The notes under the pieces are model-generated. The model was not told where the DNA came from and searched no databases. It saw only the letters and a list, made by a program, of their open reading frames with translations. 64,000 bases of DNA from positions 124,001 to 188,000 of the IMG/VR virus record IMGVR_UViG_3300048672_001051. One strand, 5' to 3'. Positions within the stretch are counted from its first letter, which is position 1. Every line of letters starts with the position of its first letter. Of the stretch, positions 12,969-36,091 are shown in pieces. The position numbers and the translations under genes were made by a program.

Positions 12969-12971
12969 TTT

Positions 12972-14642: not shown

Positions 14643-14667
14643 AATATATTTACCTATTTAAAAAGTT

Positions 14668-14741: not shown

Positions 14742-14760
14742 CATCACATTACAACAAAAA

Positions 14761-15082: not shown

Positions 15083-15087
15083 AGTAA

Positions 15088-15117
15088 TGGTCTACTGTTG
15101 TATTAAACAGTAGACCA
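15088..15117 (-). terminator. Terminator-like hairpin after vWA gene
   Basis: TGGTCTACTGT-8nt-ACAGTAGACCA. Confidence 0.6.
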
Positions 15118-15124
15118 TAAAGAA

Positions 15125-15979
15125 TTAACGATTGCAGTAAGCTTGATAATCTTTAATCCAATTTGGAAATTCAGTTAGAAGTTTATCATACAGCTGCTCG
15201 TCAGTAATTGAAGACAAAGAGTCTACTTCAAAGAAGTTGCAGTTGTCAACAGCACGACCTGACATTGTATCAAGATGCTCAAGAATGCCGTAATTGCTGC
15301 CACCCAAACCTACAAACTGCCAGAAAATATTTTCTGTAGAAGCCTGACGGATTAGTTTAGTAATTTCAGCGTCTTTATAGACGCCACCATCACTGATGAA
15401 AATAACGTAGGTTGGTAAACCATTAGTTTCATTTTTATGGTTGGCAATAACTTCATGAATAACTTTTGGCTCATCATTTGAAAAACCAATACCTACGCCA
15501 CTGCCAGCACGGCTCAAGCTTACATTCTTAACGTAGTCTGCGATTGTAGTTAAAGTAATGCTAGGCATTTGGCGAGTCTTACAAGCGAACGCATGACACT
15601 CTAAAATGCCGTCAGGATCGAAATGAGTGGCTAGTGGTACTACACGGTCAAGAACACCCTGAACAGCGCCTGAGCCGTATTGTGAGGTCATAGAGCCAGA
15701 CGCATCAAGAACAATAACAACATTTGCTTTAACTGTAGTTAAGTTATTTTTAACCAAACTAATTGCAGCCGTTTTTGCAAAATTCAGCAAGCTTGGATTT
15801 TGAGTTTCGTACTTTTTAACAAAGTCTAATGTGCTGCTAGGGCGTTCGCCAGCGGCAAACATTTCAAGAGGAGATTTTGAAGGTTGCGGCTTAACAGCTG
15901 GAGTTGGACTTACAGGGGCAGGTGGTTCTGCTACAACAGCAGCAGGTTTACTACCAAAGAGATTTGAAAAAAAGCTCAT
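15125..15979 (-). CDS. vWA domain protein (vWA-TerF-like, Ter stress system)
   Basis: MIDAS VLDASGSM; FISDGG; FWQFVGLG; LEHLDTMSGRAVDNCNFF. Confidence 0.88.
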   Translation of the reverse strand: MSFFSNLFGSKPAAVVAEPPAPVSPTPAVKPQPSKSPLEMFAAGERPSSTLDFVKKYETQNPSLLNFAKTAAISLVKNNLTTVKANVVIVLDASGSMTSQYGSGAVQGVLDRVVPLATHFDPDGILECHAFACKTRQMPSITLTTIADYVKNVSLSRAGSGVGIGFSNDEPKVIHEVIANHKNETNGLPTYVIFISDGGVYKDAEITKLIRQASTENIFWQFVGLGGSNYGILEHLDTMSGRAVDNCNFFEVDSLSSITDEQLYDKLLTEFPNWIKDYQAYCNR

Positions 15980-16189
15980 AGATTACTCGTAAAAAATCTG
16001 AAGAATATTCTTCATTAGAAATAAAGGCTGATGTTTGTATCAAACATCACTAGGGAGTTACTGCAACTGAAGGGCAGAGTGGCTGATGATTTAGGAATAA
16101 TTCACTAACATTGTATGTAGTAACTGATACAACAACTGTAATAATCACCCAAAACCATTGACGGCTTGTAAGTACAACCATAATACATC

Positions 16190-16480
16190 CTAAAGTTTAT
16201 TGACAAATCTGGATGATTTTAAGTCAACTGGAGATACATCATTTATCAAATACTGATAGAGTTCGTCAGTAAGTTTGATTGTTCTCAAATAAATTTGAAA
16301 AGCGTAGTCAACATTTTCATGCTTATAATGAAAATAACTAACTTCTAAATCAATACTAACATCATACAGAAAATGATGATCACCACCATGAAAATTCTCT
16401 ACAGCATTTTCAAATGCTTCAATAATTTTTTTAGAAGAACTATCATTAAATAAGTCTTTCATTATAAAACGTTTAATCAT
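16190..16480 (-). CDS. Hypothetical protein
   Basis: 96-aa ORF in operon. Confidence 0.6.
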   Translation of the reverse strand: MIKRFIMKDLFNDSSSKKIIEAFENAVENFHGGDHHFLYDVSIDLEVSYFHYKHENVDYAFQIYLRTIKLTDELYQYLINDVSPVDLKSSRFVNKL

Positions 16481-16488
16481 ATTAAGTC

Positions 16489-16767
16489 TTAATCTTTTTT
16501 CCGAAATTGCCAGCCAGAAGTATGTGCATAATACATAACTGTTTTTAAGTCTGAACTTACATAAACTTTACGGCTACTTTTTAAAGTCTGATAAAAAACT
16601 TTAAAAAGTTCTTGTTGCTTGTTAAGTTCTACAGTAGTCAAAGCGGTTGAGAGTCTGTTAAACAGGGGATGTTGTATAACATTAAGTTGCTTAGCTAGCG
16701 CTAAAGCATCTGATAAACAGCCATTAATTAAAAGAAACTCAATAACAGAATCATTAAGCTTATTCAT
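16489..16767 (-). CDS. Hypothetical protein
   Basis: 92-aa ORF in operon. Confidence 0.6.
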   Translation of the reverse strand: MNKLNDSVIEFLLINGCLSDALALAKQLNVIQHPLFNRLSTALTTVELNKQQELFKVFYQTLKSSRKVYVSSDLKTVMYYAHTSGWQFRKKD

Positions 16768-16787
16768 AATAAAATCTCTCGAATATG

Positions 16788-16900
16788 TGGCAGTAGACCA
16801 AGGACTTGAACCTAAAAGATATTTATTTTAAATATCTCACAGCACCATTTTAAATAACAGTAACTAGTATGTTAAATAAACTTGACCTGTGGGGTCTACC
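16788..16900 (-). ncRNA. Atypical tRNA-like element
   Basis: Acceptor GGTAGAC/GTCTACT, G73, CCA, T-loop TTCAAGT, AT-rich hairpin arm; no recognisable D or anticodon arm. Confidence 0.5.
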
Positions 16901-16906
16901 ATAATT

Positions 16907-17416
16907 TCAGCTTAAAATTTTTAACAAATCTGGAACTGCACTAGTCATACAATAAAACTGATTGACTTGGACTTGTAGAGTTTGACGCATAAAATGCGAA
17001 AAATTATCTAATCCTTTTTGTCGATCGTCAGTAATTAGATGAACTCTTGCAAATTTTAATTGATTAACAACATCAAAAACAATATTTGCTGGAAAAATAA
17101 ATTCTTTTACATTAAAAGGATCTAATGTAAAGGAATAAGTTCTTAAATTAATGTTAATATTTAATTTATTAACAGTAATAAATTCAAACCAGACTAAAAT
17201 CTCCGGTGTTAGAACAACTTTATCATTTATAGTATTTGCTTTAAAAAAAAGACCATTGACAGCTAATACATTATTTAAAAACTCTAATCGCTGTGTAGCA
17301 GAAAATGTGGCTATAAGCCACAAATGAGGCTCAAGATTTCTTTTTTGACTATTTAAAAAACTTAAAAGCGTAGGAAAGCTTGAGCCGTGAAAACTTTCAA
17401 AAAAATGATTATTCAT
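16907..17416 (-). CDS. Hypothetical protein
   Basis: 169-aa ORF. Confidence 0.65.
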   Translation of the reverse strand: MNNHFFESFHGSSFPTLLSFLNSQKRNLEPHLWLIATFSATQRLEFLNNVLAVNGLFFKANTINDKVVLTPEILVWFEFITVNKLNININLRTYSFTLDPFNVKEFIFPANIVFDVVNQLKFARVHLITDDRQKGLDNFSHFMRQTLQVQVNQFYCMTSAVPDLLKILS

Positions 17417-17475
17417 TTTTAAAGCAACCTATAATATGGGAGTACTCTCGAGATTTGGACTAGTTCTAAAAAACT

Positions 17476-18165
17476 TTAATTTATTAAATCTAGCGTGCTT
17501 TTAACAAAATACAAATCTTGCAAAGATTTTTCAATATCTTTTAATTGAGCTTCATGTCTAAGACGTGGTGAAATACATTCTAAAATATTATTAAAGTATT
17601 CAGAGTCAGACAAACAACGACTATAAAAATCAATGTAAACTTGAGTAATAAGTTTACTTAGTTTTAATAGATTCTTTTCTGTATTATCATTGATTTTAAA
17701 AACTCTAGAGTAATTTTCTGAAATACACATTGTTGGAAAATATTTTAAATCAGTAACTAAGTTTTCATACCAAAAATCATAATTAAAAATATTTTCAGGT
17801 GTTAAAAATACTATAGAGTTAATTTTTTCATCTGTTTCTTTTAAAGCTTTTTCCCACTGCTCTTCTTCAGTTAATTTTAAAAAATTATTTATACGTTTTC
17901 TAGATTTGTAATTTTCTTCAAGTCTATTTTCTATATAAACATTTTCATAATATTGAAGGCACCTTTCTGGTGTTTGTACATCTTTATAGTACTCTGTAAA
18001 AGGAATGTGCCTGTAAAATTGAACAGACTCTACTGGATTACCTTCTACAAAATCAACTCCATTCCCTATAGTAAATAAAAAATGGCTTAATACATCAATC
18101 GGTTTTGAAAAACCTGCTGTATATTTAATTTGAGTTTCAGTTACATATTGAATTAAATAACTCAT
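17476..18165 (-). CDS. Hypothetical protein
   Basis: 229-aa ORF. Confidence 0.7.
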   Translation of the reverse strand: MSYLIQYVTETQIKYTAGFSKPIDVLSHFLFTIGNGVDFVEGNPVESVQFYRHIPFTEYYKDVQTPERCLQYYENVYIENRLEENYKSRKRINNFLKLTEEEQWEKALKETDEKINSIVFLTPENIFNYDFWYENLVTDLKYFPTMCISENYSRVFKINDNTEKNLLKLSKLITQVYIDFYSRCLSDSEYFNNILECISPRLRHEAQLKDIEKSLQDLYFVKSTLDLIN

Positions 18166-18186
18166 TTTTAAATTAACCTGGAATAT

Positions 18187-18244
18187 TGGTCGGCGCAGTC
18201 GGAATCGAACCGACGGTGTACCATTACGATGTACGCGATTCGAA
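18187..18244 (-). pseudogene. 3' half (33-76) of a class II-bodied tRNA with TCG (Arg) anticodon
   Basis: T-TCG-AA-TCGC, long arm, GTCGG-TTCGATT-CCGAC, TGCGCCG-A-CCA. Confidence 0.8.
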
Positions 18245-18253
18245 CTAAGAATT

Positions 18254-18280
18254 TGGTATCACGAACGGGATTCGAAACTG
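18254..18280 (-). pseudogene. Degenerate tRNA 3' end fragment
   Basis: TTCGAAT T-loop plus acceptor strand and ACCA. Confidence 0.55.
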
Positions 18281-18288
18281 TACTATAT

Positions 18289-18339
18289 TGGTGTGGGTAG
18301 GGAGAGTCGAACTCCCAAGGCCGAAACCTGTCAGATTTT
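18289..18339 (-). pseudogene. 3' half (35-76) of a tRNA-Leu-like gene
   Basis: AA-AA-TCTGA, AGGT-TTCG-GCCT arm, T arm, TACCCAC-A-CCA. Confidence 0.75.
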
Positions 18340-18378
18340 CTTACCACTATAGTGTAGGTTTTGGTATACAGTATAAAC

Positions 18379-18407
18379 TTGTAATTTATGTGTATAGCTG
18401 TTATAAT
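18379..18407 (+). promoter_or_regulatory. Sigma70-type promoter reading antisense through tRNA-Leu into the endonuclease gene
   Basis: TTGTAA-N17-TATAAT with extended -10 TGn. Confidence 0.65.
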
Positions 18408-18411
18408 ATAT

Positions 18412-18497
18412 TGGTGGGCGCGACAGGACTTGAACCTGCATGCTTTAAAGCGGGACTGTTTAAGAATCCTGAGTCTACCTGATTTCTCCACACGCCC
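18412..18497 (-). tRNA. tRNA-Leu(TAA)
   Basis: GGATT-CT-TAA-AC-AGTCC; long arm; CCA. Confidence 0.9.
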
Positions 18498-18526
18498 AAT
18501 AAATTAAAACTAATAAAGGATTAAAA

Positions 18527-19285
18527 ATGAATCAATTATCAAAAGAACAATTATATAGTTTATATATAAATTATTATCAAACAAATATAAGTAAATTAAA
18601 AACTGCTAAAGAAACTAAAATAGATCGCAGTACAGTAAGAAAATACTTTAATTTATTTCAAACTTCTAATATTGAAGATATTATAAATACAACACACTCA
18701 GAACTTGCTTCATTAAAAGACTATATAAATAGCTGGTCAGTAGTTGAAAAACGTTGTTATACTTATATTTTAGCACAATATTTTGGGGATGGCTATATAA
18801 ATAAAACAGCCAGAACTTGGAAATTAAGGATTTCCAATGATAAAAAATATGAAAATATAAACTGTCTTATAGAAGATTGTCTTACTACTTTATTTCCAAA
18901 CAATTGTGTATCAAGGATTAATAAAACAGGGTGTTGGGATATTTGCGTTCACAGTAAAAAACTCCCTATTTTATTTCCTCACTTAGGGCAGGGTAAAAAA
19001 CATGAAAGAAAAATAAGTTTAACAACAGAACAATTAGAACTATTAAAAATGTATCCTAAGGATTTTATCTTAGGTTGTTTACATTCCGATGGTGCTAAGT
19101 GTAAAAGAAAAACAACAAATCACTTTTATCAATTTACTAATTTATCTTTAGATATAAAAGAATTTTTTGAAATTGCTTGTAGTTGTATAGGCATACCACT
19201 TAAAAATATTAAAGCTAAAAATGTTTATATTTATAAAAGAGAATATATAAATATTATAGATTCATTTTATATTGATAAATCTTAA
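18527..19285 (+). CDS. Freestanding LAGLIDADG-type homing endonuclease with N-terminal HTH
   Basis: YILAQYFGDGYI and FILGCLHSDG motifs. Confidence 0.8.
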   Translation: MNQLSKEQLYSLYINYYQTNISKLKTAKETKIDRSTVRKYFNLFQTSNIEDIINTTHSELASLKDYINSWSVVEKRCYTYILAQYFGDGYINKTARTWKLRISNDKKYENINCLIEDCLTTLFPNNCVSRINKTGCWDICVHSKKLPILFPHLGQGKKHERKISLTTEQLELLKMYPKDFILGCLHSDGAKCKRKTTNHFYQFTNLSLDIKEFFEIACSCIGIPLKNIKAKNVYIYKREYINIIDSFYIDKS

Positions 19286-19293
19286 TTTTAACA

Positions 19294-19313
19294 ACCTGCT
19301 TCGCCATGCGCCG
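19294..19313 (-). pseudogene. 5' fragment of the split Arg(TCG) tRNA
   Basis: CGGCGCA-TG-GCGAAGCAGGT; pairs 7/7 with acceptor strand TGCGCCG at 18191-18197. Confidence 0.8.
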
Positions 19314-19624
19314 ATATGTTTCTAACAACAATATAAAATCTTCTGGCTATATTTTCGTATACAGCATATCTGTTTTGTTAAAAGATCCGGACCTTTCAGA
19401 TGTTTTTACTCTTAAACTACAGAAGATAAACTACTTATTACAAAATTTTTGCAGTGCAAACTGCTTTGTAATCCGTATAAAAACGTGTATTAAATAACTT
19501 AGTTTGTACTTGTTTCGCTTCTAAGCAAGCTTTAGGCGTTGAATACTCTTGAGAGCCGCTAGAAACACTGTCAGTGCTACTTACAAGAACCCAAGTTAAA
19601 ATCCAAATATTCATACAAAAGTCC

Positions 19625-19840
19625 TTAAATAATAAATTCGACAGTACTTGGTGCTGTCACCATGTAATAAGTTTCTTTAAAAAGTTTTAAAGAAACACTT
19701 ACGTTTTTAAACGGAATTTTATCACGAAAAGCATTAATCAAATTTGGTAAAGATTCTGCAAGAGCTAGTTTAATATCAACTAATCCAGACTCTTTTTCTT
19801 TATCCAATAACTTTAAAAGTTCTTGTTTAAAGTTAATCAT
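19625..19840 (-). CDS. Hypothetical protein (start moved to MINFKQ)
   Basis: 71 aa after trimming overlap with upstream gene. Confidence 0.5.
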   Translation of the reverse strand: MINFKQELLKLLDKEKESGLVDIKLALAESLPNLINAFRDKIPFKNVSVSLKLFKETYYMVTAPSTVEFII

Positions 19841-20054
19841 ATGTAATCGTCCGTTGTTTAAAAGTTGCACTACTAGTAGTGCTATTTTCGCAACGTGCAA
19901 TGTAAAGTCTTTCGGCATTAACCCACAATTTTGTTAATGCGCAGTCTTCAAAACCTGAACGTAAATTTAATTCACGCTCAGCTTCTTCTATAGACGTACA
20001 GCCTTGTAAAAAAGCTAAAAACACTGCAGCAATAATAAAACTTTTAATTTTCAT
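19833..20054 (-). CDS. Small lipoprotein
   Basis: Signal peptide with lipobox LQGC. Confidence 0.7.
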   Translation of the reverse strand: MKIKSFIIAAVFLAFLQGCTSIEEAERELNLRSGFEDCALTKLWVNAERLYIARCENSTTSSATFKQRTITYD

Positions 20055-20180
20055 AAGTAATCCTAGTTATAAAGTCATGCTTACTGAACAGCTTCAGCAG
20101 CTTTAAACATTTTATCAATAATAATTTCAAGCTCATCGAGTAAAAGATGAGCTTGTTTAATAAGTTCTGGCATAAATACC

Positions 20181-20717
20181 TCAACAATATTGTGAGTGGT
20201 TATTTGGTGCAATACAAAAATTGTTAGTCAACAGTTTAAAACAACCTTGAGGTACAATTTTTGAAAGCTTGATATACTCATTGGCATTTAAAAGTTCACG
20301 CACAAGTGTGCCTGAAATGTTTAAATCTGATGTAAAATCACAAAAAGTAACTTTTGGATTTAACTCTAAAATTTGATTTAAATATGTAGTAGTACTTAAG
20401 TCTTTCTTAGAACCCGCTAAATGACTGATATCAAAAAGATCAATGAGTTTTGAAACAGACTGTAGCCAGCTGTTGGTGTCTAAGTCATCGTATAACGGTA
20501 TAAATAAGAATTTATCTGCGTCATCAGATGAAAAAGAATTTTTAATACAGTTGACTCTAAAATTAAAATCAAATGGATTTAAATCGTCTACAATACCTAC
20601 GCCTATAGCGACAACAACATTGTTCAAAGTTTTATTCAAAGCTTGTTGAAGTTGCTGAAAATGTCCATTATGGAAACCTTGAAAACGCCCAACAATTAGA
20701 AAATTTGAGTTAATCAT
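20181..20717 (-). CDS. NMN adenylyltransferase (NadM-like, HxGH nucleotidyltransferase)
   Basis: GRFQGFHNGH and ISGTLVRE motifs. Confidence 0.8.
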   Translation of the reverse strand: MINSNFLIVGRFQGFHNGHFQQLQQALNKTLNNVVVAIGVGIVDDLNPFDFNFRVNCIKNSFSSDDADKFLFIPLYDDLDTNSWLQSVSKLIDLFDISHLAGSKKDLSTTTYLNQILELNPKVTFCDFTSDLNISGTLVRELLNANEYIKLSKIVPQGCFKLLTNNFCIAPNNHSQYC

Positions 20718-21195
20718 TTTGACAACCTTGAAGCTTTTTAATTAAATTATCAGCAACTTCAGCAGTAAAACCATAACTATTATCAATTTTTAGAAACTTA
20801 GTTTCATGTTGATAACTTGCATCAGAATCGTCGTCTAAGACGTAGTAATCTTCACAAGTGTTATTGGCTAACCAGTCGGAGATTTGCAAGCCACGGGCAA
20901 TTAAGCCCGCGCGCTTACGGTGTTCTTCAGGTACTAAATCTTTGCAAGTTGTTGAACCAACAACTTCTGCTGTTAAACCCATTGATTTACAAACTATCTG
21001 TAAAGTTTGAAAGTCATATAGTTTGCGCCAACTACTGCTGACAACTATTTTAAAATTACAAACATCAGTTAAGCGATTAATATTTGCAATTAATATTGGA
21101 GAATAAGAATCAATATCATTAGATTGTAATGTTACTAAGTCTGTCGACTCACAAGCATTTATAACACCATCAAAATCAAGAAAAAGAATTTTCAT
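20710..21195 (-). CDS. HAD-family phosphatase (RNA-repair type)
   Basis: FLDFDGV, VVSSSWR, VLDDD; start trimmed to exclude tRNA-Trp. Confidence 0.85.
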   Translation of the reverse strand: MKILFLDFDGVINACESTDLVTLQSNDIDSYSPILIANINRLTDVCNFKIVVSSSWRKLYDFQTLQIVCKSMGLTAEVVGSTTCKDLVPEEHRKRAGLIARGLQISDWLANNTCEDYYVLDDDSDASYQHETKFLKIDNSYGFTAEVADNLIKKLQGCQND

Positions 21196-21209
21196 GTCTA
21201 AACTCAAAA

Positions 21210-21284
21210 TGGCAGCTATGCACGGACTCGAACCGCAACTAATGGTTTTGGAGACCATTGTCCTGCCAATTAGACGACATAGCT
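21210..21284 (-). tRNA. tRNA-Trp(CCA)
   Basis: ATGGT-CT-CCA-AA-ACCAT; CCA. Confidence 0.93.
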
Positions 21285-21291
21285 ACAACAA

Positions 21292-23829
21292 TTAACGATA
21301 CATTTTTGTTAAATATTTTGTTAACAAAAACTGTGCGTGTAAATCAGAACGCTCTTCTGCGTACTCAATTTCTAACTCAGTTGAAAGCTCTTGTAAACGT
21401 TTATCAATTTTAAGTAATAAAGAGTCAAGGCTAAAAGTCATTTCATTTAAACCTACCACTTTTAAACCTGCCAAAGTTTTTAAACGTGATATGGCAACAT
21501 AACCCTGACCTTTTTCAAAAACTTTTGATAAATCTATCTCAGCTTCGTCTAAACTCATACCTTGACAGTTTGACATTACAAAGCCATTTTGAATAAAATT
21601 TCCAGCATTTGGAACCTCAACACATTGCGATTCAAGTTCAATATTGACTAAATTTTCAATTCGAACGTAATAAAAATCTAACAAGTCAGAACAAATTGAA
21701 GGTACATAATCTCTAGTGACGTAACCTCTTTTTAAACTAGCTTTATACATTGTATAAGATATGTATTTATTCGTATACCAATTTAAAAGAGTTTCCTTAG
21801 TTACTGGAACTCTACTATTAGAATCAGTTCTGATAATAGTGTAATTTAAAAGTCTTTGTTGATTAAATTTATTTATAAATCCGACATAATCTCTAAAAAG
21901 CTTGCAGTACTTACCATAAATATATAAATAAGTAATGTTATCTTTTTTTGATATTGTACAAGCAATCCCTACACGTAATAAGACTTGCTGTACAAATTGA
22001 CAAACAGTAAAAGATTTATTAGCAAATTCAATGTGATCTACTTTACTTTGTTTAATATTTACAGTGCCGTCTTCATAAAGACCTTTTAAAAAAGATAACT
22101 GAACAGAAAGGGGTGATTGTTTTATAATATGAGGAACTTGTTTTAAATTTGAAACTAATTCAGGACACCACTCATTCAGTATATAATGAGAAAGATGACG
22201 AGAACAGACTTCAAATTGATAAAAATCTTTACCACCCACATTTAAAATTCTAATAGGGTTATCAACGACATTAAATAAATTAATACATAATTGTTTAAAA
22301 CGTTCTACTGTTTCAATATGTTTTTTAGTTAAGCTAAAAGAACTTTTTCTAACAGTTCCGTCAGCTAAAAGCAATCCTAAGAATTCTGAGAAATTTTCAT
22401 CAAGTACTTCTGGTAATTTGTATTTTACAGTGCGTACATCAAATATTTTTGAAGTCGCAGATGACAATTTTAAATAAGGACTATTACATGTTTGATTAAG
22501 TTTCAGTTTAAGCCATTGACCTACAATAAGCTCTTTAGCTTCTACATAATTCCAAGAATCTCCAGTAAAAGCTAAGCACTTGTGAGAATCAGTGACCTTA
22601 ATACTATAGTTACGCTCACAAATAATTTCTTTTCCAGTTAGTAAGTGGTTATTAACTTTATTAACATAAGGCAACACTTCAAACTCAGTTTGTATTGCGC
22701 CTGACTCTTGTATATCTTTAATCTGCAATAAGCCTTGAGTAGTATTAACATAAGTGTCAGGATGAATACACTTATGGACTGTTATAGCGTAAGCAAGCGT
22801 TAAAGGCACTTGAGTATAAGTAGCGGTGTTACCAGCGCCATTGTTTTCAAAACGCCATTCAACAGGGTCGGCAGTCACTGTTAATCCTGTTGTTAATTTA
22901 ACTTTAGGATAATATTGACCATTAAATCTTTCAAAACCTACGACTGTACCTTGAGACCCATTAGCGTACTGTCCATTTATGTTGTCATTTTTAACAAACA
23001 TAACTTTAGTGTTAAGTTTTAATTCAAGAACTTCAGGAGCTTTAATATTTGCTTTTAACATATCTACAAATATAGATTTACCTGTAGTTTTAGCCTTATT
23101 AGTATACACAATACCTGGCAGGGCATCAAAATGTTGTTTATTAATAGCTGTAACGTCTCTGTTGTGAGTATACAACTTTAAAGGATTTGTGAGCGTATTT
23201 GAAGAAGTCGCAGCAATAATATCAATGTGCTCTTGAGTGACAGTTTGAGATCTTATTGCATTTAAAATATCATTTAACTTATCACCATCAGCTTGACGAT
23301 ATTGTTTTGTTAAGTAGCAAGACTTAAAATTTGCTCTAACCCAAACAGGTGACATAAAGCAAAATTTATCGCGATTGGCTTCACCATTAGTACTAACTGG
23401 TGGTAATTGTAGCCCATCACCAGCTAATATAACTTGAAGACCGCCAAATGGTTTTTCACTCTGCCGTAGCCTACGTAGTACAAAATCAATTGCTTCAAAC
23501 TGATCTTTGTGCAACATAGATATTTCATCAATAACTAAAACGCGAGCTTTAATTATCTTCATGTATTTTATTTGATTTTTCTTAATCTTGTCGACATGTG
23601 TTTGTGTAATGTGGCTTTTAATTCCAATGCCAGTCCAAGAGTGAATTGTCTGACCATCAATATTTGTAGCTGCAATACCTGTAGACGCAGTAATAGCGTA
23701 AGGCACGTTACGAGCTTTAAGATAGTCTAAATACACTTTTAAAGTATAAGATTTACCAACACCTGCAGAGCCAGTTAAAAATACATTGGCACCTGTTTTA
23801 AGAATATTTAAAGCAGTTGTTTGATCCAT
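21292..23829 (-). CDS. Pif1-family SF1B helicase precursor containing an intein
   Basis: GSAGVGKS, IDEISM, GDGLQLPP, AITVHK|CQG, YVAISR. Confidence 0.92.
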   Translation of the reverse strand: MDQTTALNILKTGANVFLTGSAGVGKSYTLKVYLDYLKARNVPYAITASTGIAATNIDGQTIHSWTGIGIKSHITQTHVDKIKKNQIKYMKIIKARVLVIDEISMLHKDQFEAIDFVLRRLRQSEKPFGGLQVILAGDGLQLPPVSTNGEANRDKFCFMSPVWVRANFKSCYLTKQYRQADGDKLNDILNAIRSQTVTQEHIDIIAATSSNTLTNPLKLYTHNRDVTAINKQHFDALPGIVYTNKAKTTGKSIFVDMLKANIKAPEVLELKLNTKVMFVKNDNINGQYANGSQGTVVGFERFNGQYYPKVKLTTGLTVTADPVEWRFENNGAGNTATYTQVPLTLAYAITVHKCIHPDTYVNTTQGLLQIKDIQESGAIQTEFEVLPYVNKVNNHLLTGKEIICERNYSIKVTDSHKCLAFTGDSWNYVEAKELIVGQWLKLKLNQTCNSPYLKLSSATSKIFDVRTVKYKLPEVLDENFSEFLGLLLADGTVRKSSFSLTKKHIETVERFKQLCINLFNVVDNPIRILNVGGKDFYQFEVCSRHLSHYILNEWCPELVSNLKQVPHIIKQSPLSVQLSFLKGLYEDGTVNIKQSKVDHIEFANKSFTVCQFVQQVLLRVGIACTISKKDNITYLYIYGKYCKLFRDYVGFINKFNQQRLLNYTIIRTDSNSRVPVTKETLLNWYTNKYISYTMYKASLKRGYVTRDYVPSICSDLLDFYYVRIENLVNIELESQCVEVPNAGNFIQNGFVMSNCQGMSLDEAEIDLSKVFEKGQGYVAISRLKTLAGLKVVGLNEMTFSLDSLLLKIDKRLQELSTELEIEYAEERSDLHAQFLLTKYLTKMYR
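21568..22770 (-). mobile_element. 401-aa intein with LAGLIDADG endonuclease
   Basis: Starts CIHPDT after TVHK, ends FVMSN before Cys+1; FLGLLLADG and FLKGLYEDG motifs. Confidence 0.92.
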
Positions 23830-23885
23830 AGCAGTGTTTCATTTTTAATAATTGTATATTTAATGTGTTTTATAAAATTTGTGAG

Positions 23886-23961
23886 TGGTCCACCTGGAGG
23901 GATTCGAACCCCCAATCTAGAGAATAGAAGTCTCTTGCTTTATCCATTTAGCCACAGGCGG
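23886..23961 (-). tRNA. tRNA-Arg(TCT)
   Basis: AGAGA-CT-TCT-AT-TCTCT; CCA. Confidence 0.93.
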
Positions 23962-23971
23962 AAAATAAAAA

Positions 23972-24148
23972 TTAATCAAAAAAACTTTCAAGAATATCTA
24001 GAAAGTTTTTTAAAACATAATCTAGAAAAGCCAAAATAATTGCAGCAACAAATCCAATTAACAATGCAAAAGAAACTTTAGTAATTGTTAAAGAAATTCC
24101 TGCAACTACAATAAATACAGCAATAAAAAATTGGAGTCTTGCTGACAT
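23972..24148 (-). CDS. 58-aa two-helix membrane protein
   Basis: Manual translation MSARLQFFIAVFIVVAG...; below track cutoff. Confidence 0.55.
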   Translation of the reverse strand: MSARLQFFIAVFIVVAGISLTITKVSFALLIGFVAAIILAFLDYVLKNFLDILESFFD

Positions 24149-24335
24149 TTTGTGAAACCTTTTAGCCTAAAGCTGAGAAATTAAAGTGTAATCACTAAGT
24201 TTAAAATTCTTAATGATAAAAACTTTGCCAGTAAAAAAGCATACTTCTTCATAATGCTGCCCTAAAATTTTTGGAGGCTTACATAAATAAAGACGACACA
24301 ATGCTTTTGTTTTATTATTACGATAAAAACTCATA

Positions 24336-24548
24336 TTAATAAAGTTTCTCTAAATATCTGTCTAGATTAGTTTTCAGCTTAAGTTTTTCTTCAGGCGTAC
24401 ATTTTGAGTAATAGCTGTAGAAAAAACTAAATTCTATCCAACCTTCCGTATTAATTACTGAACATTTGCGACACACAACATCGGTAGTTTTTAAAAACCA
24501 AGAGATTGTCGTGCCACAGGAGTGGCAGTGAGAATAAAAAATACCCAT
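24336..24548 (-). CDS. Small Zn-ribbon protein
   Basis: CHSC and CRKC pairs. Confidence 0.6.
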   Translation of the reverse strand: MGIFYSHCHSCGTTISWFLKTTDVVCRKCSVINTEGWIEFSFFYSYYSKCTPEEKLKLKTNLDRYLEKLY

Positions 24549-24572
24549 AATATAGTAAAATCCTGCGTATTT

Positions 24573-24809
24573 TTAAATTGCTAAATTCATTTTACAACAA
24601 AAATCGTCAATGTCCCGATGGTATATCTCTCCAAGACTACTTTGGTAAACAATCAATATAGGAGTACCTTTTAAAACACCTGCTGGTTTACTAATACCTA
24701 AAACTTTATATGTATTAGGTTGATCTGAATAAGTAGCTTCAATATCATTATGATCGTTCAACAGTTTTAATAAGAGATCTGGAACATAACTCTTTGCAAC
24801 TAAATTCAT
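24573..24809 (-). CDS. Hypothetical protein
   Basis: 78 aa; YKVLGI...IVYQS...YHR pattern. Confidence 0.6.
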   Translation of the reverse strand: MNLVAKSYVPDLLLKLLNDHNDIEATYSDQPNTYKVLGISKPAGVLKGTPILIVYQSSLGEIYHRDIDDFCCKMNLAI

Positions 24810-24823
24810 ATTTAAAATCTATA

Positions 24824-24900
24824 TGGAGCTTGTGCAGAGACTTTAACTCTGTATCACTGGATTTGCAATCCAGTCCCTCGAACACTTCGGGTTAACAAGC
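24824..24900 (-). tRNA. tRNA-Cys(GCA)
   Basis: CTGGA-TT-GCA-AA-TCCAG; atypical T-loop TTAAAGT; T73; CCA. Confidence 0.85.
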
Positions 24901-30799: not shown

Positions 30800-30945
30800 A
30801 AAAAATCCTATGTTTAAGTGTAAAGGAAAAAAGAAATAATAAGAAAAAGAATAGTTGTAGTATAGTAAATAAAACAACAATATTCTTTACAAAATAATGT
30901 TAAAAATTTCATGTTTAACCTTCAAAGGTAAACAAAGGCATTAAT

Positions 30946-30979
30946 GATGCTCCCTCTTATTTAAATAAGAGGGAGCATC
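30946..30979 (-). terminator. Terminator-like hairpin after NAMPT-like gene
   Basis: 15-bp perfect stem GATGCTCCCTCTTAT/ATAAGAGGGAGCATC. Confidence 0.7.
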
Positions 30980-30982
30980 TAG

Positions 30983-31272
30983 TTAAGACCAAAGACGCTG
31001 GCGAATTGCTTCCAATGAAGTTTCAGCAACAAACTGACCATCTTTATAGACAGTTTGAAGACATCCAACAGCTTCTTCTTCAAGTGTCACACTGTCTTTT
31101 AAGACGTATGCGCCACTCTCGCCAACAACTTGCAAAAGACCTTTTGCAGATTTTTTTGAAGAATCTGTTTTAGGATCTTTATAAATTGCTTGTGATTGGC
31201 CATTAACAATAGCGTTAGTGGCTTTCACTGCAGTGCCCAAATGATCACGAGAAAGCATATTCAAAGAGAATG
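30983..31272 (-). CDS. nadV: NAMPT-like protein, exon 2
   Basis: Splicing gives GVG-S-FSLNMLSRDHLGTAVKAT...KDPKTD...KKSAKG, matching the NAMPT C-terminus. Confidence 0.88.
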
Positions 31273-32289
31273 CATTTTTAAATAGTCGCCTAAAGGCGAT
31301 ACTACAGGAATATTAAAAAGTTCTGTCGACCAGTTCGTAAACACGCGAAAACTTTTATGCGTGTCTAAAATTAGTTGTTCAATCTGATAGGCAGTGTATA
31401 AATTTGTTTGTAAGCTGTCTAATAAGCTAACAGAGAGTTTAGACTTACTTTCAATAGCTTTTAAACGCTTATCTAAATTAGTCGTAATACCTATTTTATA
31501 ATAGGGTCCAACTTTTAAATAATAGACAAAAGCATTTACAAATTTTTTATCAGGATTTCTCAAAAAGAAACAATCTGAATAATTGCCGAGTAATTTTTTA
31601 TTTGCAACTAAATCGTCTATAGCACATCTAAAACAATGCTGACCTTGCAAATGTTTTGCAAAAGATTTTTTAAACAATCCGTGAATTGGGCATACAATAT
31701 CAATTACACTACGCATATTAACATATAAATCCAAATTTGTTTTAGGATAAATATATTTAAAATTGTAGTGATTATTGCAACGATTGATAACAGAATAATA
31801 GTCAGAAGTTCTTGTAACTTTAGATAAGTTAATGACACATCTCGGACAAAATTCTGTATATAATCTTTTATAAGCAAAATTTGTTAATTGATAAAAATAT
31901 GCACAATTTTTACAAATAAAATTTACTTTCAACTCTTTAAGAGTTGTTACAGTCGGTTGATCAACAACTTCATAAATAAAAGCATTAGTTTCGAAATTTT
32001 CCTTTAAAAGTGTTAAACGTTCTAAAAACTTATTAGCCATAGCTTTTGACAAATTAACATGCCTTTTTAAAGCTACGGCTGCAGCTGTAGATTGTTTATA
32101 CTCTTTTAAACATAAATGACAAGAATGTTTAGCTTGTAAATGCTTATCAGCTGTTTGCTGAAAAACATAGTTATGTTTTAAACATTTTATATCTGATTTA
32201 TCTTTCCAACTTTTAGCTTGGAAATTTGAATAATCGTATAAGCCATTGTAACGATTTTTTGCTTTGTTTATAAAAAACTCAATATTCAT
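31261..32289 (-). CDS. Intron-encoded endonuclease: Zn-finger repeats plus C-terminal GIY-YIG-like (T5orf172-type) domain
   Basis: C-x2-H...H-x4-C-x2-C repeats; VYYLKVGPYYKIGITTNLDKRL; GGAGGT SD. Confidence 0.8.
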   Translation of the reverse strand: MNIEFFINKAKNRYNGLYDYSNFQAKSWKDKSDIKCLKHNYVFQQTADKHLQAKHSCHLCLKEYKQSTAAAVALKRHVNLSKAMANKFLERLTLLKENFETNAFIYEVVDQPTVTTLKELKVNFICKNCAYFYQLTNFAYKRLYTEFCPRCVINLSKVTRTSDYYSVINRCNNHYNFKYIYPKTNLDLYVNMRSVIDIVCPIHGLFKKSFAKHLQGQHCFRCAIDDLVANKKLLGNYSDCFFLRNPDKKFVNAFVYYLKVGPYYKIGITTNLDKRLKAIESKSKLSVSLLDSLQTNLYTAYQIEQLILDTHKSFRVFTNWSTELFNIPVVSPLGDYLKMHSL

Positions 32290-32640
32290 CTAGTATTACA
32301 CCTCCATTTTTTGTGTTAATTATTATAACACAAAAATTAAAAATGTAAATTTAAAAATGGACTATATCTTCACTCCTAAATAAGGAGGCTTCCTGTTTCG
32401 GGTGATAAAACCCTACTCTACTCGCTTCTTCGGGTAGTTAACCCTATGCTTTCGATAGTCTCTGAACTCTCATCTGTATTTATTATACAGATGCTCAGCT
32501 GCGGATTAATTCATCAATAAACTTTTTACTATACCTAGGTCATTACGCTAGCCCTTATCTATATCACTATGATAAGTTAGTATTTATTGATTAAGAACAG
32601 TCCCCGCAATTAAGGAAGTTTTACTTGGGCCATTTTGTTA
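31273..32640 (-). mobile_element. Group I intron, 1368 nt
   Basis: P AATTGCGGGGA 32601-32611, Q AATCCGCAGC 32498-32507, R GTTCAGAGACTAT 32455-32467, S AAGATATAGTCC 32359-32370; P1 TTGGGT/GCCCAA with U.G at splice site; terminal G. Confidence 0.93.
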
Positions 32641-34096
32641 ACCCAACGCCAAATACAATATTGGTGCTAGCAAAGCCTTTCGCTTCAAGCCGTTTGAAAA
32701 TTTCAGTAGCACGTTCAAATGTAATGCCATCGCCATAAATCATACCGATATGACTATCTAGTACTTTATAGCCAAGCTCGTTAACCGTGCCGCCGAATAA
32801 ATCCCAAAGAGCTTCAATTGTGCCTTTGTACTCAACATCAATTTCTTTTTCAACAAAAGACATTACTGCAGTTTTATGATTGAGCTGATAATAATTTGGA
32901 GCTGCACGAACCCACGTTAATTCATTAGCAGTCACAACCCACAGCTTATCATCCCATTTAAAAGACATTGTGTAAGTAGTCACACCTTCTTTATTAGTTG
33001 GTGTGGTAGCTTCGACTTTGTTTGCAATACGCATTTTACAAACACTTAAAAATTCATCAAAAGTCTCAGCAGACTCTTTTGAAATTTCAATGTATTGCAA
33101 ATTTGTACCTGTAATGATATCGACAGGATTGCCGGAATCACCACGAATAACAAATTTGCCATCACGCGACATAATTTTGTCTTTGTGAATTGGTAAAATG
33201 TTTTCAATAACATTCCAATAGTCATAACTGTCAGCTACATAGCTGACAATACCCGTTTTGAATTGATTCAATACGTAGTCAATATACTTGACTTCACCAT
33301 CGTACTTATCATCAGGGTTAGACATTGTAATACCTAAAGTGGTAACACTATGCTCACCAGCTGGGACTGAATAGGCAATAGGTTGTTTTGAAATATCAGC
33401 ATTATAGTACTGTTCTAAGTACATGATTGCAGGCATATTATCTGAGCCCAAAGAGCTTAGAAGAAAACCTGCACCATTTGCTGCTGAACTTTCAAAACCA
33501 CTTTGACCGCGGAATGAAAAATCATGCAATTGAAAATCTACACCATCTGTTGAACCAGTGGTTTTGATTGCTGCCGCATTAGCTAAAATACGGAACAATC
33601 GGCCAACAGTTGCAACTGTCATTGGCTTCCAAATCTGAGCACTCAAGATAGTCTCAAGATAATTTGGAAGCCACTGAAAATCTGGATGAGTATTTTTTAT
33701 AGTAAACAGTGGAATGTTTGGTTGTACTAAGGAACCTTCAGGCAAGCCTTTGATTTCAATAGGTAAATAGCCCAAATCATGCAACTGTTCAAAATGCGAG
33801 TAATCACTCATACCGATGTATGGCGTGAGTACACGTTTCATCTCAGCGATAACTTCATCTTTTGGCTGATTAAAAAATGTGTCATTCCACATATTGTGAA
33901 AAATTTCTTTGATAGCTGCTTGCAAACCAAAGAAAACAATTTGATCATCAAACAACGGATAAAGTTGTTTCAAATAATGCGTAAATCGAGCAGTAAAGTT
34001 CGAATAAATCTGCTGTGTACCTGGAGTGGTAAACTGAATATGACTCAATTTGTATGAGTCTGTTAGTAGTGCTGCAAAAGCTGGAGTTAACTTCAT
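32641..34096 (-). CDS. nadV: NAMPT-like protein (NadV or Namat), exon 1; spliced product 581 aa
   Basis: LTDSYKLSH, YLET, LHDFSFRG, PAGEHS, VADSYD, RGDSGNP, IYGDGIT. Confidence 0.92.
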
Positions 34097-34105
34097 AAAA
34101 ATCTC

Positions 34106-34933
34106 TTAAAAATCATTAGCTGTTTTAACAAACATAGTATTAATCATACCATGCCAATTATAATAAGCATAAACCATGTCAATATCTACAAGCAGAGGTT
34201 CGAGACCTTTACTGAAAATACCATGAGTAATGTATAGTGTAACAGTTTTAGCGCCAGCTTCTTTTAAAGCTTTAGCTAGTTGGATAAAAGTCCAACCACC
34301 GTCGCAGATATCATCTGCAATTAAAACATCCAAACCGTCAACAGGATCAGTTACACGAGTACCTGTGATTGCACCAGTAGTGACATCACGGTCTTTCAAT
34401 GCAACAATTAACTTGTTGACGCCAAGAGCTTTGCTAACATTTAAACACTTTTTATAAGCACCAGCATCTGGACTAATAATAGCGTCAAAAGTTTTTCCAA
34501 AGTCGAATGTTTTAATACACTCATATTGATTTATAACATAAGAGTTATTAATTAAAGCTGGAGCAACATCACTGTGAGGATCAGTTACTATAACTTTAGG
34601 AAGATTGAAGCTATTTAGCAATTCTGCAAATAACTTTAAACTTTGAGCATCACCTTCAACCATTGCACGATCTTGACGTGCAAAAGAGATATATGGCAGA
34701 TATAACACAATATCAGAAGATGTTGATTTGAGGACGCTTAAGACTTGGAGCAATGCAAGAACGCCACTGGAATCTTTTATTTTCGCAGTAACATTAAAGC
34801 TATCACAAGTGTTAGCAGCCCCTAGAGTGACTTGTACTTCTCCAGCTGAGAAAGTTTTGCAACTCACCTCAAGTGGGATTGTTGTTTGAAGTCCTTTGAG
34901 ACGACCAACAACGGTAATTAATGATTTCATCAT
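34106..34933 (-). CDS. prs: Ribose-phosphate pyrophosphokinase-like protein (PRS or Adps)
   Basis: FSAGEV, PYISFARQDR, DPHSDV, SPDAGA, ADDICDGGWTF, THGIFSKG. Confidence 0.9.
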   Translation of the reverse strand: MMKSLITVVGRLKGLQTTIPLEVSCKTFSAGEVQVTLGAANTCDSFNVTAKIKDSSGVLALLQVLSVLKSTSSDIVLYLPYISFARQDRAMVEGDAQSLKLFAELLNSFNLPKVIVTDPHSDVAPALINNSYVINQYECIKTFDFGKTFDAIISPDAGAYKKCLNVSKALGVNKLIVALKDRDVTTGAITGTRVTDPVDGLDVLIADDICDGGWTFIQLAKALKEAGAKTVTLYITHGIFSKGLEPLLVDIDMVYAYYNWHGMINTMFVKTANDF

Positions 34934-35007
34934 AATTCCTGTAGAAGTTGTCTATATGATAGATACTAAAACAATACCTATCAGATAACCGCCTTATACA
35001 AAAAGAG

Positions 35008-35040
35008 TGGGGGGGTTGATTTAAAAAATCAATCCCCCCA
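35008..35040 (-). terminator. Terminator-like hairpin
   Basis: G-run TTGAT / ATCAA C-run stem downstream of TerC-like gene. Confidence 0.6.
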
Positions 35041-35047
35041 CTTCAAA

Positions 35048-36091
35048 TTATTTAGCTTTTAAAGACTTAACAACAGCAATACCGATAAATACAATACCGA
35101 GAACTGCAGCTAAAAACTCATTAACATGGCTAAAAATTGAATAAAACATAATACCAACTAGACCTAAGATAGCCCAGAATGCACCATGTTCAAGATATTT
35201 CAGTGTTGAAATACGTTGATTATCAAGCAGTTGCAATGTAAAACTACGTACAAACATTGCACCAATACCTAGACCTAGCATAATAATAAAGATGTTGGTA
35301 CTAACAGCAAAAGCTGCTACAACGCCATCTAAACTGAAAGATGCATCAACAAGCTCAAGATAAAGCAAACCAACAACACCTTGTCGAATTACACCATCTG
35401 CAGTTCCATCAGAGAGTTTATCTGAAATGAAATGCAGTGCATAAAATGACACCATACCGATGGCTGCTGCGATAACTACTTCAACGCCAAAATATGCTTG
35501 ATAAAATCCATAAACAAATGCTGCAAGCGCAACGGAAGTTACCAGCAATGGTTGGCGAAGTTTTTGAAATAATGTTTCAAACTTAGGAAACAAGTGGTCT
35601 TCTTTATCTTTATTAATAAAGAAACCCATAGCAACACAAAGAAGAAACATACCGCCAAAAGCTGCAATCTGAGGATGAACTGATTGCAAAACTTCACCAT
35701 AGTGTTTTGAATCGTTAACTGCCATATTGAAAGTTTCAATCAAGCCTAAGCTTGCAGCAGAACTAACAATTACCAGTGGGAACACAAAACGCATACCAAA
35801 GACGGCGATAGGTAAACCAACCCAAAGGAAAATTTTACGCCATTTATCATTCCAATTTTTCAAAATTGTCATGTTAAAAACAGCATTATCCAATGATACA
35901 GAGGTTTCAACAAGGCCTAGCATTAAAACGCTAAGCAAGCCTGCCAGTCCAAAAAAATAAAAAGCAACAATTGCAGCAAAGATTGTTGCAAAAAAGGACG
36001 CAGTATGATACTTACGGATTTGATCAAACATGATAGAACTCTGATTTAACGCCAAGAAAGCCACGCGTTGTTGCCACTTTATACGTTTCAC
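35048..36091 (-). CDS. TerC-like (DUF475-type) membrane protein
   Basis: ETSVSLDNAV, DASFSLDGVVAAFA, YLEHGAFWAI; many TM helices. Confidence 0.88.
   Translation of the reverse strand: MKRIKWQQRVAFLALNQSSIMFDQIRKYHTASFFATIFAAIVAFYFFGLAGLLSVLMLGLVETSVSLDNAVFNMTILKNWNDKWRKIFLWVGLPIAVFGMRFVFPLVIVSSAASLGLIETFNMAVNDSKHYGEVLQSVHPQIAAFGGMFLLCVAMGFFINKDKEDHLFPKFETLFQKLRQPLLVTSVALAAFVYGFYQAYFGVEVVIAAAIGMVSFYALHFISDKLSDGTADGVIRQGVVGLLYLELVDASFSLDGVVAAFAVSTNIFIIMLGLGIGAMFVRSFTLQLLDNQRISTLKYLEHGAFWAILGLVGIMFYSIFSHVNEFLAAVLGIVFIGIAVVKSLKAK

What the first reader, a model, noticed from the sequence alone, without database searches (positions are those of the whole stretch)
30983..34096. Group I intron in a NAMPT-like gene whose endonuclease ORF runs through the 3' splice site
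Seen: the two NAMPT ORF fragments are joined by a 1368-nt intron with textbook P/Q/R/S elements and P1 (exon TTGGGT with IGS GCCCAA). Splicing GGG T|CA TTC restores GVGSFSLNMLSRD and a 581-aa protein. The endonuclease ORF (31261-32289) includes the terminal G, and its TGA lies 10-12 nt inside exon 2. The excised intron therefore carries a non-stop ORF, and ribosomes on the precursor would cover the 3' splice site. Inference: nuclease translation and splicing compete, giving built-in control of NAD-enzyme output. Established phage group I hosts are mostly DNA-metabolism, lysin and terminase genes; I do not recall NAMPT as a host.
Basis: partly seen in the sequence, partly recalled or inferred. 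Interest (0 to 1): 0.7.

Follow-up and report, generated by a model that had tools for sequence, protein, structure and literature searches.

The report
Mobile group I intron in phage NAMPT
A 230-kb freshwater phage carries a self-splicing-type intron, with a homing-nuclease gene, in its NAD-salvage gene NAMPT; the nuclease gene really does end 12 bases into the next exon, but relatives suggest this is a side effect of where the nuclease gene sits, not a control device.

Summary
The gene is on the minus strand. NAMPT exon 1 is 34096-32641, the group I intron is 32640-31273 (1368 nt), and exon 2 is 31272-30983. The spliced product is 581 aa. The 342-aa nuclease ORF (32289-31261) contains the intron's last G and stops at a TGA at exon-2 bases 10-12.

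Relatives add context:
- A 91%-identical phage NAMPT has the same intron without the ORF (295 nt, core about 98% identical).
- Two more distant NAMPT genes have the intron at the same site. Their nuclease is homologous but frameshifted, and its stop lies 7 nt before the 3' splice site.
- The nuclease cassette sits in the loop of a short terminal hairpin (P9.0-like). Its last codons are therefore the hairpin's 3' strand, the terminal G and the P10 exon bases.
- The nuclease is a zinc-ribbon + T5orf172 (GIY-YIG-type) protein. All six distant homologues examined lie next to or inside NAMPT genes.

A near-consensus promoter and a hairpin that hides the ribosome-binding site suggest the nuclease is made from its own transcript. 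No RNA data exist, so splicing is not shown. I found no earlier report of a NAMPT intron.

The parts
32641..34096 (-). NAMPT exon 1 (485 codons plus the first base of a Ser codon); ends ...GGC GTT GGG T
   Evidence: Pfam NAPRTase and NAMPT_N. 45% identity to the uninterrupted NAMPT of Acinetobacter phage TAC1, up to GVG.
31273..32640 (-). Group I intron, subgroup IA type, 1368 nt
   Evidence: RF00028 at 48.6 bits, E 7.7e-11, full model. ORF-less twin of 295 nt in L011. 14 compensatory pairs across four NAMPT introns.
32625..32646 (-). P1: exon UUGGGU (32646-32641) pairs with the internal guide GCCCAA (32630-32625). AAUG (32634-32631) is the intron strand of P10.
   Evidence: Read from the sequence. 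P1 covaries with the exon in L013, which has exon GGC with guide GGUCAA.
32621..32623 (-). TAA that stops exon-1 read-through 18 nt into the intron, directly after the guide sequence
   Evidence: L012 and L013 also have early in-frame stops.
32359..32620 (-). Ribozyme core P3-P8, including P5 extensions, P6, R element (32467-32456), P7.1/P7.2, P8 and S element (32371-32359)
   Evidence: cmscan alignment, RNAalifold pairs, element positions.
32353..32358 (-). 5' strand of the terminal P9.0-like pairing (AUUUUU)
   Evidence: Complementary to 31279-31274. The equivalents are AUUU/AAAU in L011 and UAGUUUA/UAAACUA in L012.
31278..32353 (-). Nuclease cassette (1076 nt), absent from the ORF-less twin intron
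   Evidence: The contig of run X2 (the source of L011) skips exactly 31278-32353 and has 3 nt in its place; alignment.
32322..32349 (-). Promoter-like site: TTTACA, 16 nt, TATAAT with TG
   Evidence: Best match of the region 30800-35200, 11 of 12. Such matches can be chance in AT-rich DNA.
32296..32348 (-). Hairpin that pairs the Shine-Dalgarno sequence (GGAGG, 32305-32301) with upstream UACAUUUUU
   Evidence: MFE -22.2 kcal/mol, z -4.3, 0 of 200 shuffles as stable. RNA starting near 32316 leaves the site open.
31261..32289 (-). Homing-endonuclease ORF, 342 aa: three zinc-ribbon (DUF723) modules plus a C-terminal T5orf172/MUG113 (GIY-YIG-type) domain. Its last 5 codons and stop cover the P9.0 3' strand, the terminal G and exon-2 bases 1-12.
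   Evidence: Pfam hits above cut-off; PHROG 681 'endonuclease' at 8e-31; conserved residues; fold matches to Slx1, HIGLE and I-TevI.
31273..31279 (-). 3' strand of the P9.0-like pairing (AAAAAU, 31279-31274) and the terminal G (31273); these bases are codons AAA AUG of the nuclease
30983..31272 (-). NAMPT exon 2 (96 codons). Its first 4 bases, CAUU, form P10. Bases 10-12 (31263-31261) are the nuclease TGA.
   Evidence: 50% identity to TAC1 NAMPT residues 481-581; Pfam NAPRTase C-terminal part.
30949..30976 (-). Perfect 12-bp hairpin after the NAMPT stop codon (possible terminator, no U tract)

Best explanation
This is a mobile-type group I intron of subgroup IA. It sits in the codons for the conserved GVGS motif of a phage nicotinamide phosphoribosyltransferase gene.

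The whole ribozyme lies in the first ~285 nt. After the P7 3' strand only a short terminal hairpin (P9.0-like) and the terminal G remain. A 1076-nt cassette sits in the loop of that hairpin. It encodes a zinc-ribbon + T5orf172 (GIY-YIG-type) homing endonuclease from a clade that specialises on NAMPT genes.

Because only 7 nt of intron follow the cassette, the nuclease ORF has no stop of its own. It reads through the hairpin's 3' strand, the terminal G and the P10 exon bases, to an out-of-frame TGA formed by the conserved Ser-Leu-Asn codons of exon 2.

Most likely (inferred) the nuclease is translated from a transcript that starts at a promoter inside the cassette. That RNA lacks the ribozyme, cannot splice and still has the stop codon. 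On the NAMPT precursor, and on the excised intron, the ribosome-binding site is held in a hairpin. The splice-site pairings then stay free and NAMPT mRNA is made.

The crossing of the splice site is a by-product of compaction, tolerated because of this separation. It is not a regulatory device.
For: Shown:
- Junction, intron class and ORF geometry.
- Structure supported by 14 compensatory pairs, including P1 with its exon and P7, P8 and the terminal pairing.
- The ORF-less twin differs only by the cassette.
- The intron core is about 98% identical between the twins, while the exons are 86% and 82% identical. This points to recent transfer or loss.
- The homologous nuclease sits at the same place in L012 and L013, with its stop 7 nt before the splice site.
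- Nuclease motifs are intact, and the extra tail KMHSL lies beyond the family's usual C-terminus.
- The fold of residues 244-342 is closest to GIY-YIG nucleases.
- All six homologues examined are adjacent to or inside NAMPT genes.
- The T4 nrdD intron has the same layout, with the core first and the ORF after it, ending 21 nt before the 3' splice site.

Inferred:
- An internal promoter.
- Shine-Dalgarno sequestration only in RNA from upstream (weaker in L012).
Against: - No RNA or protein data exist for this phage. Splicing, the transcription start and the nuclease product are all unshown.
- RF00028 scores sit just under the curated cut-off (48.6 against 50).
- Sigma-70-like matches are not enriched in the window. 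An equally good match lies inside the L012 ribozyme core, and the host is unknown, so the promoter may be chance.
- The sequestering stem is rich in G.U pairs and is not significant in L013.
- The terminal pairing in the window consists of A-U pairs only.
Confidence: 0.62

Rival explanations
1. Nuclease translation and splicing compete on the same precursor. Ribosomes finishing the nuclease ORF cover the 3' splice site, and spliced-out introns give a non-stop message. The overlap therefore tunes how much NAMPT is made.
For: - The geometry is real: the last five codons and the stop overlie the P9.0 3' strand, the terminal G and P10.
- The excised intron would lack the stop codon.
- From the literature, translation across splice sites and early I-TevI translation reduce splicing of T4 introns (Gibb and Edgell 2010, and others cited in PMC3984707).
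Against: - Sister introns that stop 7 nt upstream would suffer the same occlusion by a terminating ribosome. The crossing therefore adds little.
- The ribosome-binding site is predicted to be paired in precursor RNA.
- Nothing links the arrangement to NAD metabolism.
- An ORF-less twin shows that the intron and gene work, or at least persist, without it.
Confidence: 0.2
2. The nuclease gene is on its way out. A 7-nt loss removed its own stop codon, and the read-through is an early, neutral or slightly harmful step of decay. The intron persists only as a ribozyme.
For: - The tail after the conserved Tyr codon is 7 nt shorter than in L012 and L013.
- The L012 and L013 nucleases are already frameshifted.
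- L011 has lost, or lacks, the cassette.
- This is the known cycle of gain, decay and loss of homing genes.
Against: - The 342-codon frame is fully open in DNA of 32% G+C.
- All invariant family residues are present.
- The start, the Shine-Dalgarno sequence and the upstream signals are intact.
Confidence: 0.15
3. Not a working intron. NAMPT is a broken gene, or a gene in two pieces, with a nuclease gene between the pieces, as in some relatives.
For: Relatives L021, L023 and L028 have NAMPT split by a homologous nuclease gene with no detectable ribozyme.
Against: - A full ribozyme core is present here, with compensatory changes across lineages.
- Exon 2 has no start codon or ribosome-binding site of its own at the junction.
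- The junction restores the motif exactly.
Confidence: 0.03

Closest known systems
Phage T4 nrdD (sunY) group IA intron with I-TevII
   Same: - The complete ribozyme core comes first.
- A GIY-YIG-family nuclease ORF lies after the core.
- The 3' splice site lies about 1 kb from the core and has to be brought back by terminal pairings.

Checked here: core at L020 7884-7653, ORF 7613-6837, intron 7848-6816.
   Different: - I-TevII stops 21 nt before the 3' splice site, whereas here the ORF runs 12 nt past it.
- The nuclease domain order and family differ. Here the T5orf172 domain is C-terminal with zinc-ribbon modules in front.
- The host gene is nrdD, not NAMPT.
- The ORF-less form here has only 13 nt after P7.
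Phage T4 td intron with I-TevI (delayed translation)
   Same: From the literature (Gibb and Edgell 2010, cited in PMC3984707): the ribosome-binding site is hidden in a hairpin on early transcripts, and a promoter inside the intron gives RNA that lacks one arm. The predicted layout here is the same.
   Different: - In T4 this was shown by experiment; here it is only predicted.
- The I-TevI ORF sits in the P6 loop and does not touch a splice site.
Free-standing nucleases beside intron-containing genes (collaborative homing) and the ICP1 T5orf172 gene next to the terL intron
   Same: T5orf172-type homing genes associate with one essential or conserved phage gene and with group I introns (PMC10448857). 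Relatives of this nuclease lie free-standing beside NAMPT (L025-L027).
   Different: Here the T5orf172-type gene is inside the intron. In ICP1 it is reported beside the intron, not within it.
Genes-in-pieces ribonucleotide reductase (nuclease mobE splitting nrdA in phage Aeh1)
   Same: Relatives L021, L023 and L028 have NAMPT cut into two ORFs by a homologous nuclease gene, without a ribozyme.
   Different: The window itself has a true intron. Whether the split NAMPT works has not been tested.

Membership tests
Group I intron (RF00028) | Conserved core P3-P8 with P, Q, R, S elements, scored by covariance model | tested here: inconclusive
   48.6 bits against a curated cut-off of 50, E 7.7e-11, full model 1-253. 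Relatives score 38.7, 42.4 and 69.1 bits. The sub-threshold score is offset by covariation.
Group I intron (RF00028) | Helices kept by compensatory changes | tested here: met
   69 predicted pairs, 14 with changes on both sides, covering P1, P5, P5a-c, P6 and P7.1. P7, P8 and the terminal pairing were read directly. Only four sequences from two lineages were available.
Group I intron (RF00028) | U.G pair at the 5' splice site in P1, terminal G, P10 with the 3' exon | tested here: met
   UUGGGU/GCCCAA with U32641.G32630; G31273; CAUU/AAUG of 4 bp, and 6 bp in L011.
Group I intron (RF00028) | Guanosine-dependent self-splicing that gives ligated exons | not testable with these tools
   No RNA run holds the sequence.
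Subgroup IA | Extra hairpins P7.1 and P7.2 between P7 and the 3' strand of P3 | tested here: met
   Two hairpins (GGGU/ACCC twice) lie in the 58 nt between the R element and P3'. They are replaced by GAGA/UCUC and GGGAA/UUCCC in L012 and L013.
GIY-YIG superfamily nuclease, T5orf172/MUG113 type | Profile match above the curated cut-off | tested here: met
   MUG113 at 28.1 bits (cut-off 22.3) and T5orf172 at 26.8 bits (cut-off 20), residues 263-328.
GIY-YIG superfamily nuclease, T5orf172/MUG113 type | Conserved Tyr-Tyr, YKIG, Arg and Glu positions | tested here: met
   Y256, Y257, K265, G267, R275, E304 and E323 are invariant in 17 sequences. The assignment of catalytic roles comes from knowledge of the family.
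GIY-YIG superfamily nuclease, T5orf172/MUG113 type | GIY-YIG fold | tested here: inconclusive
   For residues 244-342 the best solved matches are Slx1 (Z 6.1 and 5.5), HIGLE (5.8) and I-TevI (4.0). These Z values lie in the range the tool calls middling. Foldseek on the whole model found nothing.
Homing endonuclease / mobile intron | Cleaves the intron-less allele near the insertion site and drives intron transfer | not testable with these tools
   Indirect only. There is a presence/absence polymorphism of the cassette. The intron core is about 98% identical against 82-86% for the exons. The clade is always found beside NAMPT. No close intron-less allele was found; the nearest intact gene is 64% identical.
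NAMPT (NadV) | NAPRTase and NAMPT_N domains, full length after splicing, conserved GVGS...SRD motif | tested here: met
   A 64%-identical intact homologue matches solved NAMPT at E 4e-121.

The most novel reading that the evidence does not exclude
A NAMPT-specific T5orf172 homing-nuclease clade has been caught in every stage of its life cycle:
- free-standing beside NAMPT;
- splitting NAMPT into two ORFs;
- inside a group I intron;
- decayed;
- deleted.

In the window the nuclease has fused its reading frame to the ribozyme's own 3' splice-site elements and to the host exon. A properly terminated nuclease can then be made only from RNA that has not spliced, which would make nuclease synthesis and exon ligation mutually exclusive on any one molecule.
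Probability: 0.3. Interest if true: 0.7.

Novelty: new variant of a known kind. Interest (0 to 1): 0.55.

Why it matters
- It adds an NAD-salvage gene to the list of phage genes that host group I introns.
- It places a T5orf172-type nuclease inside an intron, where previous reports placed one beside an intron.
- The twin introns, with and without the nuclease cassette and otherwise about 98% identical, show exactly where and how a homing gene sits in a ribozyme.
- The series of states around one target gene (free-standing, gene-splitting, intron-borne, decayed, lost) is useful material for the question of how mobile introns arise.
- The overlap of an ORF with the terminal pairing, the terminal G and P10 is a clean natural test case for interference between translation and splicing.
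- Phage NAMPT genes are also of interest because NAD depletion is a bacterial defence. I did not test any link to that here.

Tried and rejected
- **Free-standing nuclease idea.** I first read the MUG113 genes after the L012 and L013 ribozymes as free-standing nucleases beside an ORF-less intron. Reading the DNA showed they are the C-terminal pieces of a frameshifted intron-borne nuclease.
- **Second crossing in the same genome.** I suspected another ORF crossing a 3' splice site in the DNA polymerase gene. It is an intein in the downstream exon.
- **Pattern search.** A pattern from P3-P4 of the intron found nothing in the viral contigs. In the metagenome contigs it found only unrelated group I introns.
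- **Sequencing runs.** The two searches gave DNA metagenomes only, plus one doubtful 'RNA' run with 6% of the words. There is no splicing evidence.
- **Whole-model Foldseek against the PDB.** It gave no meaningful match.
- **Literature.** Searches for an intron ORF ending in the downstream exon found nothing relevant. This is a limited library, so it is no proof of absence.
- **Intron-less or other alleles.** The other DNA runs added only the ORF-less form.
Full report
**1. What is there**

The feature lies on the minus strand. ORF listing and direct reading give the layout:
- A 491-codon ORF (34096-32621) with NAPRTase and NAMPT_N domains.
- A 342-codon ORF (32289-31261) with MUG113/T5orf172 matches above Pfam's cut-offs.
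- A 93-codon ORF (31264-30983) that matches the C-terminal part of NAPRTase.

Compared with the uninterrupted NAMPT of Acinetobacter phage TAC1, the first ORF aligns to residue 479 (…NIVFGVG). The third ORF aligns from residue 481 (YSLNMLSRDHLG), leaving exactly one residue between them.

Joining U32641 to C31272 gives an open frame of 581 codons reading …FGVGSFSLNMLSRD…. Of 83 frame-compatible U…G junction pairs around the site, only this one restores the motif found in more than a hundred homologues.

**2. It is a group I intron**

Rfam's gathering search missed the intron. An E-value search gave RF00028 over the whole model at 48.6 bits (cut-off 50), E 7.7e-11, at 32696-32338. Features read from the sequence:
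- P1 is exon UUGGGU with GCCCAA, with a U.G pair at the splice site.
- AAUG next to the guide sequence can pair with the first four exon-2 bases (P10).
- The intron ends in G.
- Two hairpins between P7 and P3' mark subgroup IA.

An alignment with three related NAMPT introns (see section 3) gives 69 consensus pairs, 14 of them with compensatory changes. One of these lies in P1: L013 has the synonymous exon change GGG to GGC together with the guide change GCCCAA to GGUCAA. P7, P8 and P7.1 also change on both strands. Self-splicing itself is untested, because no RNA run holds this sequence.

**3. Relatives change the picture**

A search with the exon-1 ORF found 7929 NAMPT relatives. Among the best 120, three stop right after G[VI]G.

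- **L011** (wastewater metagenome; exon-1 protein 91% identical). It has a 295-nt intron at the same site with no ORF.
  - The core differs from the window only in five bases of the P6 loop.
  - The exons are only 86% and 82% identical.
  - After the S element it has just 13 nt, AUUUUAAGAAAUG, which can form a 4-bp hairpin followed by the terminal G.
  - Laying that run's contigs on the window shows a clean skip of 31278-32353, 1076 nt, with 3 nt in its place.
- **L012 and L013** (exon-1 proteins 54-55% identical). They carry introns of 1131 and 1129 nt at the same codon position.
  - Their nuclease is homologous to the window's (52% identity over the nuclease domain).
  - It is broken by a shared frameshift, and in L012 by a further stop codon.
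  - The cassette again follows the S element directly and lies inside a terminal pairing (UAGUUUA/UAAACUA in L012).
  - The nuclease stop codon is part of the 3' strand of that pairing, 7 nt before the splice site.

So the nuclease cassette occupies the loop of a short terminal hairpin in both intron lineages. The window differs only in having a tail 7 nt shorter after the conserved Tyr codon. The frame therefore runs on through AAA AUG|CAU UCU CUU UGA.

Because the homologous nuclease sits at the same spot in both lineages, the ORF-less L011 form is most simply a later loss. This is an inference.

**4. The nuclease**

- The closest relative in 5.8 billion proteins is only 39% identical.
- The family is about 325 aa long. 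It has three zinc-ribbon-like modules (Pfam DUF723; a weak match to RNA polymerase subunit RPA12) and a C-terminal T5orf172 domain.
- All invariant positions are present in the window protein. Its last residues, KMHSL, extend past the usual family end.
- A model with mean pLDDT 82.7 gives GIY-YIG nucleases as the best solved matches for residues 244-342: Slx1 Z 6.1, HIGLE 5.8, I-TevI 4.0. These are modest scores.

All six homologues whose contigs I fetched lie at NAMPT genes:
- In L021/L022, L023/L024 and L028 the nuclease gene splits NAMPT into two ORFs a few codons after GVGS, with no ribozyme detectable.
- In L025, L026 and L027 it lies free-standing beside an intact NAMPT.

This is a NAMPT-associated homing-nuclease clade.

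**5. How it probably works**

Shown by sequence: the last five sense codons and the stop of the nuclease ORF overlie the terminal pairing's 3' strand, the terminal G and the P10 exon bases. The excised intron would carry the ORF without a stop.

Inferred: the nuclease is made from its own transcript.
- The best promoter-like site between 30800 and 35200 (11 of 12, with TG) is at 32349-32322, 33 nt before the start codon.
- RNA arriving from upstream folds a hairpin (32348-32296, -22.2 kcal/mol, z -4.3) that pairs GGAGGUGUA with UACAUUUUU. RNA starting after the -10 element leaves the site free.
- This is the layout described for I-TevI in the T4 td intron (Gibb and Edgell 2010, cited in PMC3984707).
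- An RNA started there has no ribozyme, cannot splice and keeps the exon-2 stop codon.

Caveats:
- Sigma-70-like sites are not enriched in this window (4 found, 3.1 expected).
- An equally good match lies inside the L012 ribozyme core.
- L012 has a weaker sequestering hairpin, and L013 has none that is significant.
- The host is unknown.

**6.

Competition between nuclease translation and splicing is physically plausible, and the principle is known from T4. But nothing shows that it is used as control of NAMPT output. The sister introns that stop 7 nt earlier would be blocked by a terminating ribosome just the same. I rate it as a possible consequence, not the design.

**7. Comparison with known systems**

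- The nearest described architecture is the T4 nrdD (sunY) intron. I checked it in the T4 record: core 7884-7653, I-TevII 7613-6837 and intron 7848-6816 of L020, so that ORF ends 21 nt before the 3' splice site.
- The review of bacterial group I introns states that nuclease ORFs can overlap core sequences. I found no description of one ending in the 3' exon, within a limited library.
- A T5orf172 gene is described beside the terL intron of phage ICP1, not inside it.
- No paper in the library links NAMPT or nadV with an intron.
- Related intron cores in isolated phages lie in lysin, nrdD, recombinase and other genes.
- A spread sample of 60 of the 1985 phage records with NAMPT showed no intron-sized interruption.

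**8. Verdict**

The element is a new host-gene and nuclease-family combination of a well-known kind of element. The ORF crossing the splice site is real, but it is best read as a by-product of compaction. The main open points are experimental: splicing, the transcription start and nuclease activity.

Noticed in passing
L013:7028-7362: The NAMPT gene of this relative has a second group I intron (RF00028 at 69.1 bits), 12 codons after the first, between ...SRDHLG and FAVKATNA.
   Followed up: partly
L021:676-4276, L023:1524-4282, L028:1467-4282: NAMPT is split into two ORFs by a homologous nuclease gene, with no ribozyme detected. In L021 the N-terminal piece also carries an intein in the RPD|SGDP motif.
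   Followed up: partly
L025:1485-3984, L026:1364-3984, L027:3001-5598: Free-standing members of the same nuclease clade lie directly beside intact NAMPT genes, upstream or divergent.
   Followed up: partly
L019:2333-5861 (genome C1:70832-74360): The family A DNA polymerase gene of the same phage is interrupted by a group I intron (61.7 bits). Its downstream exon also holds a LAGLIDADG intein.
   Followed up: partly
L018:2506-2730 and 4424-4699 (genome C1:105505-105729, 107423-107698): Two further group I intron matches (43.3 and 48.8 bits). An HNH-like 'intron encoded nuclease' ORF lies nearby, and a LAGLIDADG ORF lies on the opposite strand. The host genes were not identified.
   Followed up: no
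L012:7050-7070 and L013:6475-6495: The intron nucleases of both relatives share the same frameshift at cggaaataaata. This is either inherited decay or a programmed shift.
   Followed up: no
window 7163-24900 (minus strand): Sixteen tRNA matches in about 18 kb. The genome is a 229,656-bp virus record rated 98% complete, from a freshwater metagenome.
   Followed up: no
window 34106-36091 and L011:2963-11368: NAMPT sits in a module with a ribose-phosphate pyrophosphokinase and a TerC/DUF475 membrane protein. In the close relative, NADAR, TerD and TROVE genes follow.
   Followed up: no
window 32621-32623: The exon-1 reading frame stops at a TAA directly after the internal guide sequence. A terminating ribosome would therefore sit on P1. 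L012 and L013 stop even earlier.
   Followed up: partly
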